Shown here piece after piece: positions 1 to 31,400 of a stretch of 64,000 nt of DNA (position 1 is its first letter; each line of letters opens with the position of its first letter). Where the stretch lies: the NCBI RefSeq assembly GCF_016432865.1, contig NC_067401.1:446400001-446464000 (forward strand), read 5' to 3'. Source of the DNA: Antechinus flavipes. Its lineage: Eukaryota. Under the pieces are notes generated by a model. That model saw only the letters and a list, made by a program, of their open reading frames with translations, had not been told where the DNA came from and did no database searches. The position numbers and the translations under genes were made by a program.

Positions 1-1000
1 GCCCCGCCCCGGCCGCCGCTGCCGCTCCTTCCGCCACCTCTCCCGCCCTGCCCCGCCTCCCCAAGCTACGCTCCGCCCCCTGAGGCCCCGCCTCTTGCCT
101 CCCTCGCTGCTCTTCTCTCCTCTCCCGGGCCGGGCTCCGCCCCTCCCCTCCCCGGCTCCTCTGCCCGCTCCCTCTGAGGCGGCGGTGGCGGCGGCTCCGC
201 CCGGCTCCGGCTCCGGCCCCGGCTCCGGCTCTGGCTCGGCTCCGCCCGGCCTGACATGAGCATCATGGACTTCAATGTGAAGAAGCTGGCTGCGGACGCT
301 GGCACTTTCCTCAGCCGTGCCGTGCAGGTAGCGCGCGGGACGGGCCGGGGCTGGCGGGCGGGAGGCCGAGGCCCGTGGCGGCCCGTTCCCCAGGCCCCGC
401 CTCCGGCCGCTGACAGCCGGGCCCGGCCTGGCCTAAGGGGGGGGTGGGGGCGGGTCGGTAACGGAAGGAGCTGCGGCCTCGCCCTCTTCCTTTCCCCGAG
501 GGCCGCGGCCACCAGGGAGGGGCCTTTCCCGGAGCCGGAGGAAGGCCTGAGCCGCGGCCTGACCTCCTGACCTCCCCCGGGCCCTTGGGGCCCCCACCCG
601 GGAAGCGTCGGTTTTGGGCTAGACAGCTGCTGGGAGGTGGGGGAGCGCTCCGGGGACCCTGCGGGCCCTGGCTGGGGGCGCCGCGCTGGAGGTAGCCAGG
701 GGCCGGCTCTGGCCGGGGGCTGGGCCGGGGGCTTGGCCTCGCCTCAGTGTAGGTCCGAGACTTCCCTCGGGCCTCCGGGAGGGTCTCGTCCTCAGCTGCC
801 TCGGAATAGCCGGCCCCTCGGCTCCTGGGCTCGGCATTTAGTGCAGCTTAATTACGTTCTTCTGAGGGAGCCCGGCGCTGGGTTGGAAGTTTTTCGCAGA
901 AACTTTTGTTGTTGTTTTTAACTGGGAATAAGTTGAGGTTTCGGTGGGAAGCCCGCCGGGAGGTGTCCGAGGCAGGGGAAGGAGTGACTCAAGGCTTTCT
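1..1000. promoter_or_regulatory. SH3GLB1: CpG island / TATA-less GC-box promoter, 5'UTR and start of intron 1 of SH3GLB1
   Basis: Very GC- and CpG-rich against an AT-rich, CpG-poor window. Four CTCCGCCC (Sp/KLF GC box) copies at 71, 135, 195 and 240, plus GCCCCGCCC at 1. No ATG upstream of 256. The TSS cannot be placed from sequence. Confidence 0.9.
256..327 (+). CDS. SH3GLB1: SH3GLB1 exon 1 coding part (MSIMDFNVKKLAADAGTFLSRAVQ, helix H0)
   Basis: ATG at 256, 24 codons, donor CAG|gtagcg at 328; matches the endophilin-B1 N-terminus. Confidence 0.98.
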
Positions 1001-1819
1001 CAAGTTTCAGATTCCAACTGGAAGGGGCCGGAGGGACCGGCTCTGGACTGGCCACTGGAGACGGAGAAAAGTAGCCGGAAAAATAGCCAGTCCGCTCCAG
1101 GCTCCAAAGCCCGCCTGCACACAGTCCGCCCCAGAGCTCCTTTAAAGTACCTTGAACCTTGGTATTGCTTAGACATCACATTTAGGCATGATTCTTGGTG
1201 AAATTTTTGAACCACCTCCCCCTGAATTTTAATGAAAATAGCTTTAAAAAAAAAAAAAAGCCCCAGTTCGACAAGACATCATTTAAGATTGAGTTTTTTT
1301 GGTTGAATCAGTTTTCTGGGTTCATGGTTACGATTAGAATGTTTGAGGACTTGGAGTAAACTTAAATTTATGGTCATTCTATTCTAATTCTCCTTAGCTC
1401 TGGTCATTTAATAACCCATTGAACTGGTTTCCTTGCTTATGTTTTGTTTTGATCTCATAATATTGTAAAAAATATTGTCTTTCTTTAGGATGATTGACAT
1501 TTGATAAATAAAGTCTAGTTCTTCCAATGTGTTTCTTATGTTCCTAAGACAGGATGCTGATAGAATTCTTATACATTTATGTTGTCTGATCTGTTTAATT
1601 AGTCTTTCTGAAATTTGAACCTTGTAATTTCACTGAGAAATTCACATTTTCTATTTAGGCCACTAAGATGTTGCCTAAAATTGTACCTACCTTTGTTAAA
1701 AGCAAGAGACTTCTCCTGACCCAGCTAATTTCAGTTGGAATTTTAGTCATTGTTTCTTGGGAATTTACTTATAAATGGGTCAATGACAAGTCAAATTAAT
1801 TCTTGACTCAAATCAGAAA

Positions 1820-1890
1820 ATGCTAATTAAGCATTTATTATGTGGTGGTCATTGTCAATGACCACCACATAATAAATGCTTAATTAGCAT
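1820..1890. repeat. Perfect inverted repeat, 35-bp arms with a 1-nt spacer
   Basis: 1820-1854 atgctaattaagcatttattatgtggtggtcattg is the exact reverse complement of 1856-1890. Confidence 0.97.
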
Positions 1891-3864
1891 AAAAAAGACA
1901 GTTTGAAATTTATATTTTTTGAAAGATGTGACAGGTACACAAATAACAATGTTGAGATGGAGCCAAATCTTAGGATGGAAGAGTTGAGGTAGAAAGGATC
2001 ATTAGGCATCTGGTTCTAATCAGGTGGAATATGGAGGTTAAATGACCTGCCCAAAGACACACAGGAAGTGGCCAAAGTGCAACTTGAACCGAAGTCTTCT
2101 GACTCTTCGTTGTAAGAATATATGGCCTCATCATACAGGAAAATTTGAGAACAGAAAGCATACTTTTCCAATGGCCAGGCAGGAATCAAGGAAAGTTTCA
2201 GGCTGTATTTTATGTATTAAAAAGGCTTGACTAGCTAGATGCTTTATTAAGTAAATCAGAACTCCAAGTGCCCATTAGGTCAATTTGTACATTGGCCAAA
2301 CCTCTAAATGCCAAATGCAGTTTTAATCTCTGTCTATATTTAACATTGTCTTTCTCCACATGCTCGGTTCCATTTGGAGTGACTTGGTTTGATATGTTTG
2401 TATAGAGTGGTAGCCTAAGGAGACACAACTGGAATTTACTATATTAACTTCAGAAGACAGACAGTAAAGTCTAGATGTGTTGATTGTATGCTTTTAAAGA
2501 AGTGGTGATTTAGAAAACTAGAAAAAAAGCCTTTGTGAGCTTTATTTATAGTTCACTCTCTTTTACCTGCCTGTAATGTTAGCTTGGACTTAATCTTTTT
2601 AGGAATAAATTTTAAATTATTAATATTAAATCAGTATAAATATGTGAAATTTAAAAAAAGTCTGGAACCATTAAGAATAAAACTTACCACCTTATTGAGT
2701 TAGGAGATCTTGGGACTTTTATTTCATGTGAGACTGAAAATAGTATGCTGATTGTTTAGACAGAACACTGCTTTGTGAAGCTTATTTCAAAAACAGCATT
2801 AAGTCAATAGATGAGATTTCATTCTATACTTTGTTGACTTCAGTGATCACAGCAGTTATAGGTAGGGTCATAGATTTAGAGTTGGATTAGAATTTAGAGA
2901 TCACCTAACCTATAATCATGTATAAAGTCTAATATGTTGCAATTAAAGCTTGACAACTGTACCAGACCATAAATTAATTAAAAAAAAAAAAGTAGAAGGA
3001 AAAACAAATTGTTATCTATCTAAATATTAAGAATTACCCATTACAATCAAATAACATTTCTTAGTATTGGGAAGAATAAGCAACAAACCAGAATTTGTAA
3101 GGAGCCATTTCCCCTCATATGTAGTATATGTTTATTTTAATTTCCTCCGAGTAGCAGACTTTTTAAATCCTAGCAAAAAAAAAAAAAAAATCCATCTCTT
3201 CCGTCAAGGTTACTCCTGACTACACTCAGCTTAGAGTACCCTCTTCTTCCTGTAAACATTATCATCAATTTATTGGCACAAACTTAAGATGTCGTCTGTC
3301 ATTGTCTTGAACTATCATTTAGCGCTCTTATAAGATTAATGTCAAAAATATGTCTTGTCTTTCTTTGTTTCTTCTATAATAGGGGAGTGCCTTGTATACA
3401 GTAGTAACGTGTTAAATTAAAAGGAGAAAATATATAATTTTCATTTAAAAACTATATTAGGAGTTCAGGTGTAATAACTCATGCTATGGCAAGGCTAAAG
3501 TTAGGGAATTACTTAAGATTGGAGTTGGAGAGAGAAAATTGATCAGATAATGCACTAGTCAGCCTGAGGAGGAAAATAAGCAGGTCAAAGCTTGTGTGTT
3601 GATCAGCAGTGAGAAGGCTCCTCTACTTTGAGTCTGGGCAAGATCAGGAGACCAGTTTCCCAACCTCACTACCAACACAAAAAAAGTAGGATAGCAAAAG
3701 GAAAGCACTCTCATTTCTCAGAAGGACTAATTGCTTTTAAGATTTCACTCAAATATCACCTTTTATATATTAACCCTTTCCTGATTTTCATTTTTCCCTT
3801 CCCCTTCAGGCCCACCGGTCATCCTTTGCCCTTTCTCTCAAAACTACTTTGTATTCATTTTCTA

Positions 3865-4056
3865 AATTCCATTTTTATTTTTTCTCAACTAAATCTAAAC
3901 ATTTTTAAACATTCGTTTTTTTAAATTTTGAGTTACAAATTCTTTTCTCCCTTCTTCCCTTCCCCCTCCTTGAGCAGAGAAGCAATTTGATATAGATTAT
4001 ACATGTGCAGTCATGCAAAACATTTCCATATTAGCGATGTTGTAAAAGAAAATATC
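3865..4056 (-). mobile_element. L1 3'-end fragment
   Basis: T-rich start, then the marsupial L1 3'UTR antisense motif (atacatgtgcagtcatgcaaaacatttccatattag), similar to the copies at 51467 and 60640. Confidence 0.6.
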
Positions 4057-4092
4057 TTGTATTCATTTTTATATATTATTTATATGCATATA

Positions 4093-4128
4093 TGTGTGTG
4101 TATACATATATATATGTATACACACACA
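4093..4128. repeat. 36-bp perfect palindrome within a (TG)n/(TA)n/(CA)n microsatellite
   Basis: tgtgtgtgtatacatata|tatatgtatacacacaca; alternating purine-pyrimidine throughout. Confidence 0.9.
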
Positions 4129-4599
4129 CACACATACACACATGTTGTCTTTCCTATTAGAATATAAACTCCTTGAGGGTGGGAATCATTTCACTTTTCT
4201 CTTTATTCCCAGGACTTGATACATACTAAGTAGTTAATGTTGATTGATATGCTTATGTGCTGCATTTAAAAAAAAAAAATTCATCTCAGTAACACATTAT
4301 ATTTTGAAGCCAAATTACATTATGCTCAAATTCCTTTTGAAAGAAATAGGGTTTTCAATGATTAAGAATTTAAGAAGCATATTCTGGTGTTTAATTGAGT
4401 TTTGATTCTCTGTTGGTCTGTTTAGAATGACTTTATTTTCTTTGTCAAGTTTCCCTTTCCTTTTTCAAACCTCCTTGAGAACCCTTCTTTTAGAGATTAT
4501 AATATTAACAATTTTTCCATTCCCTTTCCATTCTTATATGTACTGCAATTGGGGTTAAATCTCAAACTGAAACCTGTTGAAGATCTTAGTTAAAAAAGC

Positions 4600-4790
4600 C
4601 AACTTCTCCCATTTCATCTAGGACTATCTCCAATCATCTTGATCTACATCTGGCCATAGGAACCCAGATGGCTCTGGAGAGGGAAGTGAGGCAGGTGACC
4701 CGGCACAGCCCTCCCTCACTTCAGTCCAATTCACTTGCATGTCATAGCATTACCTCCCTGAAGTCATGGTCCTTAACCACAATAACAATA
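4600..4790 (+). mobile_element. Marsupial RTE-type SINE fragment (WALLSI/RTESINE-like)
   Basis: Motif cacagccctccctcactt...ccaattcacttgcatgtcat...gtcatggtcct with a CAA-like tail. Related copies at 8340, 47805 and 54898. Confidence 0.6.
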
Positions 4791-5356
4791 TATAAAAAGC
4801 TCCTCATAGATAAAATTTATATGGTGTAAATAACCCTCACTTATTTAGTGTTTCATATATTTTTGTGTTAGGACATGTGTAATTAAGTACCTGTACCACT
4901 GATTGGGAAGTTATATAGGCTCAGTATCATATTCTTTCAGTTTTGTATGTGGTTATTCCATAATTAACACAAGATATTTATTTTTCTTCTCATTTCTTAA
5001 AAGGACCAAAATGTCTGCAAGAGCCTTTTTATATTTTATTTCTGAAAGCCATTTTTAAAATTATGCTTAATCTTGATATTTTAATAACATGAAGTAATTA
5101 GGAAAAAGTCCAGAGAAAAATTTTTGTTCTGCAACTGTAGTTTCCTTAGAATAGGGAATTTTTCCCCTCTACTGAATATGGAATAGGGAAGAAGAGGGAA
5201 ATCCCTCTACTGACTCAAATATGCAGTTTGTAATTTTAGTGTCAGCTTGTGGGGCTGACAAGTAAGTGATTTGCCTAAGATTATCAAATCAATGGGTATC
5301 AGTGAGAACTTGAATCTAGGTCTTCCTTAGATTGGCCATATCTCTATTCATTAAGC

Positions 5357-5549
5357 CAGGGGTCCTCAAACTTTTTAAATAGGGGGCCAGTTCACTGTCC
5401 CTCAGACTGTTGGAGAGTCGGACTATAGTAAAAGCCAAAACTTTTTTTTGTGGGCCTTTAAAGAAACGTCATAGTCCTGGGTGAGGAGGATAATGGTCCT
5501 CAGCTGCTGCATCTGTAGTTTGCCCATGGCCATAGTTTGAGGACCCCTG
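5357..5549. mobile_element. Non-autonomous hAT DNA transposon (OC1/OposCharlie1-like MITE), 193 bp
   Basis: Perfect 16-bp TIRs CAGGGGTCCTCAAACT/AGTTTGAGGACCCCTG and a perfect 8-bp TSD CATTAAGC (5349-5356, 5550-5557), diagnostic of hAT. The family name is from recalled terminal sequence. Confidence 0.92.
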
Positions 5550-6329
5550 CATTAAGCCATCCACTTAATATGCTTTAAAGTGTTGACTAAGAGCATTTAT
5601 TAAAGGCTTATACTGTGTGCTAAGCAAATAATTGCAAACAAGATTATTTCCACTTTCAAGTAGTTTATATATCTAATTGAGGAAAAATAACACCTATGAG
5701 TAGAGTAAATCTGGGAGTGATTGAATGGGACTATGGAAGGGGGCTACTGGATGGGAAGTTAGGGTAGAGTAAGGAGAGTAACTACAAAGCTGGAGTGAAG
5801 TGAGCGTTAGCCTGAATACCTCATGAAATAATCAAAGTTTTAATTATTTTAAATACCACTTTAAATGTACCCAGAATATGCAGAAAATAATGAAACTTCC
5901 AGATCAACTAAATATATGTTGCTTAAAGAGTAACTTGATTTAAAAATTAGATGTAATCAAGTTATTTGAATAGGAAAACAAAAATCTAGATATTAAAGAT
6001 AAAGATCTGGTTCTCTAGGGTGGGCTAAAAGAAAAGTTAATGTAGAGAGTCATGTATGTTTAATACCTGTCAAATTATGAGATTAGAAATCTTTCTGATT
6101 TTCTAATAGTAAATTATATCAGAATTTTCATAGTATCCATCCTCCAACAAACTTGTAATTCTTTCAAATGATTGTCCTTCCTTCGTGGAATTGATAATGT
6201 TTCTTCCTAAATTAAATATATTTCTCATGCAAGTTACATATTTTATTTTCTCCTGGCCCTGATTCTGTGTTAAATAGATCTAGTGGACCACATGCTTTTT
6301 TTTTTGTAGAGACCTGAAGTTAAAATTTT

Positions 6330-12660: not shown

Positions 12661-15294
12661 TGCACTTCTCTTTGATGAATATGTGATCTCCTCAGTGTAG
12701 GTGTCCCCTCTATCAGATTGCTGTCCTTGCATACCTTACCTAGTTCTCCCACAAATCCTGAGTTTTCGAGGCTTTTTTAAACCCAAGTGAGCTGACTTTC
12801 CATCACCCTTCTCTCTCACTTCATAACTCAACTCCTTTTCTGATCCTTGATGCAAGTGATTTTTCTTTCTCTGAATCTCCCCCTTCCCGTTTTTTCTTTT
12901 CTTCTTTTTCTTTGTTGTTGTTATTATTTATTTTTCTAACAGCTGAGGAGATGGACCGATTAAGTGATGGGACCTATGTCACCCAGGACTATACCATGAT
13001 TCAAACCCAGTTGCCCCATACCTAGGTCTCTCCATCAACCTTGGTTTCCCTGTAGCTTTTGGTCTTTGGGATAAAATTTGTTTTTGTTAATTCTTATTTC
13101 TGTCTTATATGTGAGCATTCCCCTCTCCCTGAATAAAATAACCAGTGAGATCCTTGTCTATCCACTTGGGATGGATCTATCCATCTTTTTAGGTAGCTCT
13201 CCCTTTTTTTCCCCTCAAGCCAATGTTATTTTTCTTTGACTACCCAATTCTGAAGTCACAGAGTAGGATATCCTTTAGGAAATTATAGTAGTTGTTATAA
13301 AAATTTGAGTAATTATTGGTATTCAATCCCATAATATTTCAAAATATTATTAAATACCTTTAAGCTCACTAGGTTCTTATTGTAACTTATTTTGTGGTAT
13401 TTGTATAGAGAGAAATCACCTAGAAACCCAATCAATTTCTATTTTTGTTTTATATCCTTTTTAGGTTTTTTCCTTTAGGTTCTCAGTATAATAATTATAG
13501 TAATAATAGCTCATCTAGTTTTTTTCTGTTTTACACAGTGCTTTCATGTGAATTATTTCATTTAATCTTCATAGTATCTTTGTTGTGTGAGTAGGTGAGT
13601 TCCTGTTTTACCATTGAGGAACCTAAAATTCAGAAGGGGTTAAATTACAGGTACAAGGTCATGTAAGTAGTGTCAGAACCGTAACCTGACCGAAGTCTTC
13701 TGACTTCTAAAGGATTCGAGTATGAACTCCAGTATTGAAATCAATTAATCCCCTTTAATCCAGAGAGATAATTAACTTTCTCCTATTCTAATATATTCTT
13801 CCCCATTATGATTATGCATATAATGAAAGAAAACTCAATGCCTTCTGGAAAACCAAGTGTAGAGTAATTATGTAAGTTGATTTCCCTATTCATGTTGACA
13901 GAGTTCATGGAGTGAGGAAAAAAAAAAAAGATTTCCATAAATATTAAACTTTCAGATTCCTTGGGCTTTAAAGTATACAAAACAAACAAAACAAAACAAA
14001 ACAAAAAAACCTTGACTGCTTTTCAAATGAACCAATTGGCTATTGAATTTAAGGATAATTAAAAAAAAAAAAACTATTAATGGCCATTTCCAGTTAAATA
14101 AATTCACAATTTCTAGAATATAAAAATATAGCTTTTCAGGTTAATCCTAAAAGTAGGAGGAAGAAGCAGTAATCTTAAATTCCCAAACACTGCCCAGTGG
14201 TTTAGGATTATATGGGCATACCTTGCCTACTCTAGGGGAAAGGTCACCACTCACACCCCTTTCCCTAATCCTTTCTGGGATTTAGAAGGAAGTGGGAATC
14301 AAGAAGGATCTCTAGATGATATAATGGAAAATACACCAGATAAAAAGAGGATTCGAAACCTTAAGGGTGCCCACATGCAGTGGCTTTGAGCCTGGAAATA
14401 TCCAGATTTCTCCAAAAAGAAATCTTTTTTTTTTCATTTAAAATAAGATTATTTTTTAAATATTTAATTAAATTCTGGTTTCTTTTGTTTGAATAAAAAA
14501 TGTATTTTATGATCATTGAAGAAATGTTGCTGTAAAAGATAAAATTTTTGAATTCCCTCACACTCCCTGAAGAAATGAGCCATACATTCATGTGGTATGA
14601 TTGTGGTTTAAGTTTTTCCTCACTGTGCAGTGGACTTGACAATAAGTATACTACCTATCTGCATGGTAACTATGAATGCTTGTAAACTATGAAGCACTAA
14701 TTATGTGTAATTTTGTTGTTATGGATTAATAAATAACATTTATCTCCCCGATACAGCAGGGTTCCTGGCTGCTGTTTTCTAGTATAGTACCCATTTATAA
14801 CAAGGTTAGTCTTCACACCTTTGGGGACACTGTACAAAATAGAGCTTAATGCTTATGGCCTGAATAGCTTGTGGTTATTTATAAATTACAAACTGTTTAA
14901 TAAATTACCTGAAGTTATGAATTTCTATTGAGGGAAGCTTAGAAAGCAGTAGAATCAAGGTAAGAGCTTATGGTCCATAACCCATTTAAGATCTTTGCCC
15001 TCCACCTTCCCATTATTCGTTTGTATACTAATGATTTCCCTCTCTATCCAGCTTCTCCTTTCAATGATCATGTCAGTCTGTTAAGTTGTCAGGATATCTG
15101 ATCTTTAAGTGTACCTGACCTCTGTGTTGTACATTCTGATTTTCAAATATGCTGCAGGTGATTAGTCTTTTAGAATATGTCTTAATCACAAGTTGGGGAC
15201 TGCCTGTGTATATTGTTGATTATAAAATTATTTGTTGTTTTTCAACTCAGCTTGAGGGATAATTTATTCTTTTTTTTTTTTTAATCAAAAACAG

Positions 15295-31239: not shown

Positions 31240-31400
31240 ATCCTATTGTGGGAATGAATGAACAAGCATTTATTAAGTCAGTCAGTCAGTAAACATTGAT
31301 TAGGCACCTACTATACGCCAGACACAGTGTTAAATCCTGGGAAGAGAAAGACAAAGACTGTCTCTGTGCTCAAGAAGCCTTCAGTCTGATGGGCAAGACC
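31240..31400 (-). mobile_element. L2 3'-end fragment
   Basis: gaatgaatgaacaagcatttattaag...caggcacct-like...tgtgctcaagaagccttcagtctgatggg. Confidence 0.65.

What the first reader, a model, noticed from the sequence alone, without database searches (positions are those of the whole stretch)
1820..1890. Perfect 71-nt fold-back hairpin in intron 1: a possible de novo small-RNA hairpin made by template switching
Seen: 35-bp arms with zero mismatches and a 1-nt spacer. The left arm begins with an L2-tail-like motif (aagcatttatta), and L2-like aaaaaagacagt resumes right after the right arm. Known: replication template switching creates perfect inverted repeats; pri-miRNA stems are ~35 bp with basal UG and apical UGU motifs; several mammalian miRNAs derive from inverted L2 ends. 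Here UG sits at the stem base (1821-1822) and UGU at the apex (1853-1855). However, there is no CNNC and almost no loop, so Drosha would yield a ~45-nt miR-451-like hairpin. Inference: a very young duplication that could act as a small-RNA precursor, an ADAR/dsRNA substrate or a cruciform.
Basis: partly seen in the sequence, partly recalled or inferred. Interest (0 to 1): 0.7.

Follow-up and report, generated by a model that had tools for sequence, protein, structure and literature searches.

The report
Young template-switch palindrome in SH3GLB1 intron
A perfect 71-base palindrome in the first intron of the endophilin-B1 gene is real and arose very recently, when a DNA polymerase copied the 36 or so neighbouring bases backwards; this kind of mutation is well known, and nothing shows that this copy does anything yet.

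Summary
Arms 1820-1854 and 1856-1890 pair perfectly around T1855 (RNA fold -53 kcal/mol, z = -12.7). No other non-microsatellite palindrome in the 64 kb has arms longer than 12 nt.

It is not an assembly artefact. In a second individual of the same organism (run X2), short-read contigs break exactly where a 31-mer graph must break at such a palindrome, and a 60-nt contig crosses the centre without a difference.

It is young. In three related organisms (about 0.7%, 2% and 4% diverged here) one contig runs straight through. The left arm is there, the right arm is not, and 14 unrelated letters (AGTATATAAGGAAT) stand in its place. So 36 nt, the reverse complement of the left arm plus the next ancestral base, replaced those letters. 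That is the signature of a template-switch mutation, and it meets all published criteria I could test.

X2 also carries a second contig. Simulation explains it only as a second palindromic allele with 38-nt arms and a 5-nt spacer, so the centre is polymorphic.

No small-RNA, editing or cruciform role could be tested. The near-absent loop, missing CNNC and lack of conservation argue against a working miRNA. This is a clean new example of a known kind.

The parts
256..327 (+). Coding part of exon 1 of the host gene SH3GLB1 (endophilin-B1), inside a CpG island (about 1-1100). It fixes the transcribed strand as +.
   Evidence: ORF from 256; peptide matches Endophilin-B1 residues 1-24, E = 4e-9; GC 0.74-0.80 over 1-800.
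1820..1854 (+). Left arm: the pre-existing sequence that served as the source (template) of the inverted copy.
   Evidence: Present and unchanged in organism B (all 7 substitutions of its contig lie elsewhere) and present in D and F (one C>T at 1850 in F), each inside a single through-going contig.
1855..1855 (+). Centre base T. It is the complement of the ancestral A that followed the left arm, so it is best read as the first base of a 36-nt inverted copy.
   Evidence: The ancestral string after the left arm begins with A (rebuilt). The reverse complement of the new letters plus microhomology maps to ancestral positions 1820 to 1854 plus 1.
1856..1890 (+). Right arm: the new inverted copy, specific to organism A. 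The last two bases (AT, 1889-1890) are also present in the ancestral sequence, giving 2 nt of microhomology at the return switch.
   Evidence: 100% reverse complement of 1820-1854. In B and D, 22 of these 36 positions are left out and 2 are changed, leaving 14 unrelated letters. Junction analysis.
1829..1840 (+). AAGCATTTATTA, the start of an antisense L2/MIR-type 3' tail. It shows that the left arm is a decayed interspersed-repeat fragment.
   Evidence: Motif enriched in the window, 9 sites against 1.4 expected. Copies at 31264, 46089 and 55566 carry the GAATG-type lead-in. Unrelated contigs of D and F match 1806-1845. Longer alignments are weak.
2036..2104 (+). MIR-type SINE core, multi-copy. 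It is context only and not part of the palindrome.
   Evidence: 71% match to 13638-13705. Many unrelated contigs pile up at 2030-2107 in all four runs.

Best explanation
In the lineage of the sequenced organism (run organism A), a DNA polymerase switched template for a short stretch. It copied the sequence just upstream (1820-1854 plus one to three further bases) in reverse-complement orientation, then returned to its proper template using a 2-nt microhomology (AT). The inverted copy overwrote a few ancestral letters of a decayed L2/MIR tail. One event thus turned unstructured intron sequence into a perfect hairpin-forming palindrome. This is a template-switch mutation (TSM). It happened after the split from a relative that differs by only about 0.7% here, and the centre of the palindrome is still polymorphic. 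One individual appears to carry both the 35-1-35 form of the window and a 38-5-38 form. The longer form is the more natural primary product: it allows a loop-back with a 5-nt loop and has microhomology at both junctions. The window form would then follow by a 10-nt deletion at the hairpin tip. The palindrome is transcribed passively as part of SH3GLB1 intron 1 and is most likely a neutral, function-less newcomer. Shown: that it exists, that an independent individual has it, that three relatives lack it, the ancestral letters, and the junctions. Inferred: the polymerase mechanism, the letters and primacy of the second allele, and neutrality.
For: Perfect 35/1/35 palindrome. Unique in 64 kb. Not a tandem or simple repeat. 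Run X2 is a different individual of organism A: it has a 36-nt deletion at 1587-1622 and C>T at 2072 relative to the window. Its left contig ends at 1849, its right contig starts at 1861, and a 60-nt contig covers 1825-1884 with no differences at depth 19.8. These are the breaks a k=31 graph predicts. Organisms B, D and F each have one contig of 2.7-3.6 kb spanning 1500-2250, which is impossible if they held an inverted repeat of 31 nt or more. B and D share the same 22 left-out positions and 2 changes in 1855-1890, and bin depths (28.9/35.8 and 12.4/35.8) confirm which positions are missing. That leaves AGTATATAAGGAAT between the left arm and AAAAAAGACAGT. The new letters are the exact reverse complement of ancestral 1820 to 1854 plus 1; microhomology is 0+2 nt for the direct route and 1+2 nt for the 38-5-38 route. 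The ancestral RNA has no stem at this site: -22.2 against -58.8 kcal/mol. All published TSM criteria and the three 'miRNA-like hairpin' criteria are met. Second allele: a 65-nt contig lies on 1828-1882 with 10 extra letters and no mismatch at depth 14.8, and 19.8 + 14.8 is close to the flank depth of about 30. Only a 3-nt arm extension plus a 5-nt spacer reproduces all four contigs, and the 1825-1884 placement fixes the first extension letter as A, which is the ancestral base.
Against: All comparative data are Logan contigs, not raw reads. Contigs can drop minor alleles, so absence of the palindrome in B, D and F is shown for one sample each. The organisms are coded, and their branching order is inferred only from divergence over about 715 nt, with a few conflicting sites. 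F's replacement letters could not be fully read because some table rows were hidden. The letters of the 65-nt contig were not shown, so the 38-5-38 allele rests on contig geometry and simulation, and its keeping of ancestral centre letters is an assumption. Sequence alone cannot separate a replication-fork switch from snap-back synthesis during break repair. Neutrality is argued from youth, anatomy and base rates, not measured.
Confidence: 0.85

Rival explanations
1. Same product, different setting. A double-strand break near the ancestral 14 letters was repaired by polymerase-theta-mediated end joining. A resected 3' end snapped back on its own flank, was extended in cis (giving a reverse-complement templated insertion), then paired with the other end through 1-2 nt of microhomology.
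For: Snap-back synthesis gives insertions in reverse-complement configuration to the flank that served as template, primed by single-nucleotide homology (PMC5068794; PMC4912351). The event here pairs a small deletion (3-12 nt) with an inverted flank-templated insertion and 0-2 nt microhomologies.
Against: In the C. elegans data snap-back is described as a minor part of such deletion-insertions. From my own knowledge, not checked here, templated inserts of this pathway are usually shorter than 35 nt. Short inverted replacements of this kind in primate genomes have been ascribed to replication. Sequence cannot decide between the two.
Confidence: 0.25
2. The hairpin is already a working small-RNA locus. 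It would be cut out of the SH3GLB1 intron by Drosha, giving a short miR-451-like pre-miRNA, or handled as an endo-siRNA hairpin, and its products would target transcripts carrying L2/MIR tails.
For: It has a 35-bp stem with single-stranded flanks in the sense strand of an intron of a broadly expressed gene. UG lies near the base and UGU at the apex. It meets the three 'new miRNA-like sequence' criteria of PMC10710096. L2-derived miRNAs exist (PMC6433296).
Against: The spacer is 1 nt (a 3-nt loop in the fold), where a loop of 10 nt or more is strongly preferred. There is no CNNC and no mismatch motif. Rfam hits are generic, occur on both strands and fall far below gathering scores, for example mir-3912 at 45 bits against 95. 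It is absent from relatives, so there is no conservation. The base rate is about 18 miRNA genes from more than 6,000 such hairpins. No small-RNA data exist for the organism that carries it.
Confidence: 0.05
3. It is an old palindrome that the three other organisms lost.
For: Palindromes are deletion-prone, and unspaced inverted repeats are counter-selected (PMC3300023).
Against: B and D, and in outline F, share the same non-palindromic state. Those 14 letters cannot be derived from the right arm by a simple deletion: a forward alignment needs seven separate gaps and two substitutions. Arms without a single mismatch are not expected after 4% divergence.
Confidence: 0.02
4. It is a palindromic miniature transposon (MITE) insertion.
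For: Short perfect palindromes such as mariner-derived elements exist in mammals and have given rise to miRNAs (my own knowledge, not checked here).
Against: The 'empty' site in B, D and F already contains the complete left arm, so only one arm is new. Ancestral letters were overwritten rather than duplicated, so there is no target-site duplication. There is no second copy in the window.
Confidence: 0.01
5. It is an assembly fold-back artefact.
For: Long-read chimeras can create false inverted duplications.
Against: An independent individual's short-read contigs contain the centre junction at depth of about 20, and the flanking contigs end at exactly the k-1 positions expected.
Confidence: 0.01

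Closest known systems
Template-switch mutations (TSMs) that create perfect hairpins, including TSM-born miRNA loci (Monttinen, Frilander and Loytynoja, PNAS 2023, PMC10710096; for example mmu-mir-3086)
   Same: A single complex replacement puts a reverse-complement copy of adjacent sequence in place of unrelated letters. It gives perfect pairing for a stem of about 35 bp where the parent had none. [quoted passage not shown]
   Different: No small RNA is known from it. The loop is 1 nt (5 nt in the inferred second allele) rather than 10 nt or more. It is much younger than the published miRNA cases and seems still polymorphic at its centre. It is in a marsupial, whereas the published surveys cover primates and mice.
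Polymerase-theta snap-back templated insertions at repaired breaks (PMC5068794, PMC4912351)
   Same: A reverse-complement copy of the immediate flank, a small accompanying deletion, and 1-2 nt of microhomology at the junctions.
   Different: The insert here is 34-35 new letters. The setting (replication fork or break) cannot be read from the sequence.
L2-derived miRNAs formed by two nearby L2 fragments in opposite orientation (Petri et al. 2019, PMC6433296)
   Same: The arms contain the start of an L2/MIR-type 3' tail, so any small RNA would be complementary to many such tails in transcripts.
   Different: Those hairpins come from two independent old insertions and are imperfect, conserved and shown to be AGO2-bound. 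Here one fragment was duplicated in place, is perfect and unconserved, and no RNA evidence exists.
miR-451-type Dicer-independent short hairpins
   Different: From my own knowledge, not checked here, the miR-451 stem is about 17-18 bp with a 4-nt loop and is deeply conserved. Here the stem would be about 22 bp. This comparison is purely hypothetical.
Unstable DNA palindromes and centre-break revision (PMC3300023 and the work of Cunningham et al. 2003 that it cites)
   Same: It is an unspaced inverted repeat, and two alleles appear to differ only by 10 nt at the centre of symmetry, which is where palindromes are revised.
   Different: The arms are only 35-38 bp, far shorter than the palindromes studied. 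The inferred change shortens the spacer instead of creating a stabilising asymmetry. Cruciform formation was not tested.

Membership tests
Template-switch mutation (criteria of PMC10710096, Methods) | Inverted fragment of at least 15 nt | tested here: met
   36 nt including 2 nt of microhomology (34 strictly new letters); 38 nt for the inferred longer allele.
Template-switch mutation (criteria of PMC10710096, Methods) | At least 80% identity between the inverted fragment and its source | tested here: met
   100%.
Template-switch mutation (criteria of PMC10710096, Methods) | The inverted solution beats a forward alignment: at least 5 differences from the parent | tested here: met
   The forward alignment of B and D to 1855-1890 needs 22 left-out letters in seven gaps plus 2 substitutions.
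Template-switch mutation (criteria of PMC10710096, Methods) | Source region conserved in sister and outgroup | tested here: met
   The left arm is identical in B, has no listed change in D, and has one C>T (1850) in F.
Template-switch mutation (criteria of PMC10710096, Methods) | Ancestral state of the target region agreed by sister and outgroup | tested here: met
   B and D give the same 14 letters. F also lacks the arm, but its letters were only partly visible.
Template-switch mutation (criteria of PMC10710096, Methods) | Not a simple repeat | tested here: met
   No tandem repeat in 1600-2100. Arm composition is mixed, GC 0.31. dustmasker itself was not run.
TSM-born 'new miRNA-like sequence' (same paper) | No equally long hairpin in the parent; stem of 30-55; loop in the central third of the TSM region | tested here: met
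   The ancestral fold has no stem at the site. The stem is 35 bp and the centre, 1855, is the midpoint of 1820-1890.
Canonical pri-miRNA / miRNA gene | Stem of about 35 bp flanked by single-stranded RNA | tested here: met
   34-35 bp stem; the 3' flank is unpaired and the 5' flank mostly unpaired.
Canonical pri-miRNA / miRNA gene | Unstructured apical loop of about 10 nt or more | tested here: not met
   1-nt spacer, 3-nt loop in the fold; preference as stated in PMC10710096.
Canonical pri-miRNA / miRNA gene | Accessory motifs: basal UG, apical UGU, downstream CNNC | tested here: inconclusive
   UG at 1821-1822 and UGU at 1853-1855 are present, but the UG lies inside the stem. There is no CNNC in the 35 nt downstream.
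Canonical pri-miRNA / miRNA gene | Match to a described miRNA family | tested here: not met
   Best Rfam hits are 39-46 bits against gathering scores of 90-140 and occur on both strands, so they are generic hairpin matches.
Canonical pri-miRNA / miRNA gene | Discrete reads of about 22 nt with fixed ends and a 2-nt offset duplex | not testable with these tools
   No RNA run of organism A was found. The RNA runs listed belong to organism F, which lacks the palindrome.
Palindromic transposon (MITE) | The whole unit is absent from the empty site, with a target-site duplication and multiple copies | tested here: not met
   The empty site keeps the whole left arm, ancestral letters were overwritten, and the unit is single-copy in the window. 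Genome-wide copy number was not testable.
Assembly fold-back artefact | Junction absent from independent read data | tested here: not met
   A centre-spanning contig with no differences in another individual, with break points as simulated.

The most novel reading that the evidence does not exclude
This is a hairpin locus caught within roughly the first million years of its life and still segregating as two palindromic alleles, the primary 38-5-38 template-switch product and a 35-1-35 centre-deleted derivative. At least one form is already processed from the SH3GLB1 intron into small RNAs, by a non-canonical route that tolerates a tiny loop, and these pair with L2/MIR tails in many transcripts. 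That would be a natural before-and-after series for the birth of a small-RNA gene: the ancestral state in sister species and two derived alleles within one species.
Probability: 0.05. Interest if true: 0.6.

Novelty: new member of a known kind. Interest (0 to 1): 0.3.

Why it matters
Template-switch mutations are the proposed fast route from unstructured DNA to a complete hairpin, and so to new miRNA genes. This locus is an unusually clean, dated example outside primates and mice. The ancestral letters are known from close relatives, the source and the copy are both intact, and there are no later mutations. The species appears to hold two versions that differ only at the hairpin tip, which may show how such palindromes are revised after birth. 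It does not change what is known. It is a good test locus if small-RNA and long-read data for this species become available.

Tried and rejected
- **Rfam at a permissive threshold over 1-6000.** Only generic sub-threshold miRNA-hairpin hits, on both strands. Rejected as evidence of family membership.
- **Exact-product look-up of two chance ORFs next to the palindrome, to fetch orthologous contigs as readable DNA.** Neither is on record, so the relatives' letters had to be rebuilt from the read laying tables.
- **Alignment of the ancestral and derived forms to five other L2/MIR-tail copies in the window.** Scores of 17-21.5 for both forms, too weak to use as an independent polarity test.
- **Heterozygote of window plus ancestral allele in X2.** Rejected: it predicts a broken right-flank contig and a 71-mer, and neither is seen.
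- **Other centre structures with 10 extra letters** (extension 0, 1, 2, 4 or 5). Rejected by simulation. Random 11-letter centres reproduce the contigs in 3 of 1500 trials.
- **Findings search with five words.** Blank. 'palindrome' alone gave nothing on this locus but did give a species name.

Full report
**1. The observation**

Window 1820-1854 and 1856-1890 are perfect reverse complements around a single T at 1855.
- As RNA, the + strand folds into one uninterrupted stem at -53.0 kcal/mol. Shuffles average -15.7, giving z = -12.7, and 0 of 200 fold as well. The - strand does the same.
- The arm occurs nowhere else in the 64 kb, even with 3 mismatches allowed.
- A scan of the whole window for perfect palindromes with spacers up to 20 nt finds only two others: a TG/TA/CA microsatellite (18-nt arms, 4093-4128) and one with 12-nt arms. 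A looser scan agrees.
- There is no tandem repeat at the site.

**2. Context**

An ORF starting at 256 on the + strand, inside a CpG island (GC 0.74-0.80 over the first 800 nt), begins MSIMDFNVKKLAADAGTFLSRAVQ. It matches residues 1-24 of Endophilin-B1, E = 4e-9. The palindrome therefore lies about 1.5 kb into intron 1 of SH3GLB1, on the transcribed strand. I searched only this exon, by reference, and built no joined model.

The left arm holds AAGCATTTATTA. This motif is enriched in the window (9 sites against 1.4 expected). In other copies it follows a GAATG-type tail and leads into AAGTGCCTACTATGTGCC..., which from my own knowledge is the antisense 3' end of L2/MIR elements. Unrelated contigs of two other organisms also match 1806-1845. 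Longer alignments to the in-window copies are weak, so I treat the repeat context as likely but not proven. A MIR-type core lies at 2036-2104.

**3. Known RNA families**

Rfam at a permissive threshold gives only sub-threshold miRNA-model hits on both strands, for example mir-3912 at 45 bits against a gathering score of 95. Any perfect stem would give these, so there is no family membership.

**4. Is it real?**

Public runs from several coded organisms hold this stretch at graded similarity. I laid the contigs of four runs on 1500-2250.

Run X2 is a different individual of the best-matching organism (A). Relative to the window it has a 36-nt deletion at 1587-1622 and C>T at 2072. Its contigs are:
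- one ending at 1849;
- one starting at 1861;
- one of 60 nt on 1825-1884 with no differences, at depth 19.8.

A simulation of 31-mer unitigs shows that a palindrome with 35-nt arms must break the graph exactly at 1849 and 1861 and leave a separate centre unitig. The centre junction is therefore present in independent short-read data, and the assembly-artefact reading is refuted.

**5. How old is it, and what was there before?**

In organisms B (X4), D (X8) and F (X11), a single contig of 2.7-3.6 kb runs through the whole stretch. That alone excludes an inverted repeat of 31 nt or more.

*What B and D show.* In B, all 7 substitutions of the contig are accounted for and none lies in the left arm. 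B and D share exactly the same pattern in 1855-1890. The left-out letters are 2 at 1855, 1 at 1860, 8 at 1862, 1 at 1872, 1 at 1877, 3 at 1879 and 6 at 1883, and there are A>G changes at 1858 and 1876.

*Checking the coordinates.* I checked how the table numbers its places against the bin depths. 28.9/35.8 means 5 of 26 positions are missing in 1838-1863, and 12.4/35.8 means 17 of 26 are missing in 1864-1889. Both fit only if the listed place is the first letter left out.

*The ancestral letters.* The remaining letters read AGTATATAAGGAAT. The ancestral order was therefore left arm, these 14 letters, then AAAAAAGACAGT.

*Organism F.* F also lacks the arm, with only about 7 of the 26 positions in 1864-1889 matched, but some of its rows were hidden.

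*Divergence and age.* Outside the event, B differs from the window at 5 of about 715 sites (0.7%), D at about 2% and F at about 4%. On ordinary mammalian neutral rates (my own knowledge, and rough) 0.7% means a split of the order of one to a few million years, and the palindrome is younger than that. Arms without a single mismatch fit this.

**6. What kind of event?**

The new letters are the exact reverse complement of the left arm plus the ancestral A that followed it, so the centre T is part of a 36-nt copy.
- They overwrote ancestral letters rather than adding to them.
- The final AT is shared with the ancestral sequence, giving 2 nt of microhomology.
- The ancestral RNA has no stem at the site: -22.2 against -58.8 kcal/mol.

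This is the anatomy of a template-switch mutation as described by Monttinen, Frilander and Loytynoja (PMC10710096). Their published criteria are an inverted fragment of at least 15 nt, at least 80% identity, at least 5 differences from the parent, conserved source and target in sister and outgroup, and no simple repeat. All are met. So are their three criteria for a 'new miRNA-like sequence': no hairpin in the parent, a stem of 30-55, and a central loop.

A transposon is excluded because the empty site already holds the left arm. Loss of an old palindrome in three organisms is excluded because the 14 letters are not a deletion product of the right arm.

**7. A second allele**

X2 has one more contig: 65 nt, lying on 1828-1882 with 10 extra letters and no mismatch, at depth 14.8. 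Added to the 19.8 of the 60-nt contig, this is close to the flank depth of about 30.

| Simulated case | Prediction | Fit to X2 |
|---|---|---|
| Window allele alone | 61-nt centre unitig, no 65-mer | No |
| Window + ancestral allele | Right-flank contig broken at 1889-1918, plus a 71-mer | No |
| Window + palindromic allele with 38-nt arms and 5-nt spacer | All four observed contigs | Yes, to the base |

Among all palindromic centres with 10 extra letters, only a 3-nt extension with a 5-nt spacer works. Random centres work in 3 of 1500 trials. The observed placement of the 60-mer (1825-1884, not 1826-1885) also requires the first extension letter to be A, which is the ancestral base.

I could not read the 65-mer's letters. 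If its centre keeps the ancestral AGTATATA, it is the primary product:
- only 3 letters (GGA) were replaced;
- there is microhomology at both junctions (1 + 2 nt);
- it is compatible with a loop-back on a 5-nt loop.

The window's 1-nt-spacer form would then be a secondary 10-nt deletion at the hairpin tip. The direct route to the window form is harder. It has no microhomology at one junction, and it cannot be made by an intrastrand loop-back, because a 1-nt loop is sterically impossible (my inference). I give the two-step order about even odds.

**8. Replication fork or break repair?**

Polymerase-theta end joining can extend a 3' end in cis after snap-back. That gives reverse-complement inserts templated on the flank, with single-nucleotide priming (PMC5068794; PMC4912351). 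The product would look the same, so I keep this as a mechanistic rival at about 0.25. Both are template switches.

**9. Does it do anything?**

Nothing tested here says so, and the tests were not possible. The only RNA runs listed belong to organism F, which lacks the palindrome, and both read tools are capped at one call.

Against a working miRNA:
- pri-miRNAs strongly prefer an apical loop of 10 nt or more, and this one has 1 nt;
- there is no CNNC;
- the stem has no mismatches;
- there is no conservation;
- in primates, more than 6,000 such hairpins yielded only 18 miRNA genes.

In its favour:
- it sits in the sense strand of an intron, where most template-switch miRNAs lie;
- its arms carry L2/MIR-tail sequence, a known source of miRNAs and of their target sites (PMC6433296).

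A 35-bp perfect duplex is also a plausible ADAR substrate (my own knowledge). As DNA, an unspaced inverted repeat is the form most prone to cruciform extrusion (PMC3300023). The centre polymorphism may be a trace of that, but this is inference.

**10. Species**

I did not check this, and nothing here depends on it.

**11. Verdict**

The functional suggestions are untested and unlikely a priori. This is a new and very clean member of a known kind of mutation. The one feature of real interest is the apparent coexistence of two palindromic alleles that differ only at the hairpin tip.

Noticed in passing
window 4084-4143 (perfect core 4093-4128): A TG/TA/CA microsatellite forms a palindrome with 18-nt perfect arms and no spacer. 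It draws sub-threshold Rfam hits to mir-297 (57 bits against 90) and mir-466, families known to sit in such repeats.
   Followed up: partly
window 1587-1622: The second individual of organism A (run X2) has a clean 36-nt deletion here relative to the window (2 nt of junction ambiguity). Organism D has a 5-nt deletion at 1585 and F a 6-nt deletion at 1604, so this is an indel-prone spot 200 nt upstream of the palindrome.
   Followed up: no
window 1817-1835: A small hairpin predates the event: AAATGCT / AATTA / AGCATTT, a 7-bp stem at the outer end of the left arm. The inverted copy stops inside it (at 1820), so template structure may have prompted the return switch. This is speculation.
   Followed up: no
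window 1780-1787 against 1847-1854: TCAATGAC upstream is the reverse complement of GTCATTGA at the inner end of the left arm. The ancestral RNA fold pairs the two. It is probably a chance 8-mer.
   Followed up: no
window 2020-2123: Contigs from elsewhere in all four genomes pile up here (summed depth up to 289 against about 36 in the flanks), which marks a high-copy MIR-type SINE core.
   Followed up: partly
I did not examine it.
   Followed up: no
window 1942, 1532, 1915, 1989, 2109: Shared differences among organisms B, D and F conflict: B+D share states at 1532 and 1942, D+F at 1989 and 2109, and B+F at 1915. This suggests incomplete lineage sorting or recurrent mutation among these close relatives, so their branching order is not firmly fixed by this locus.
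   Followed up: no
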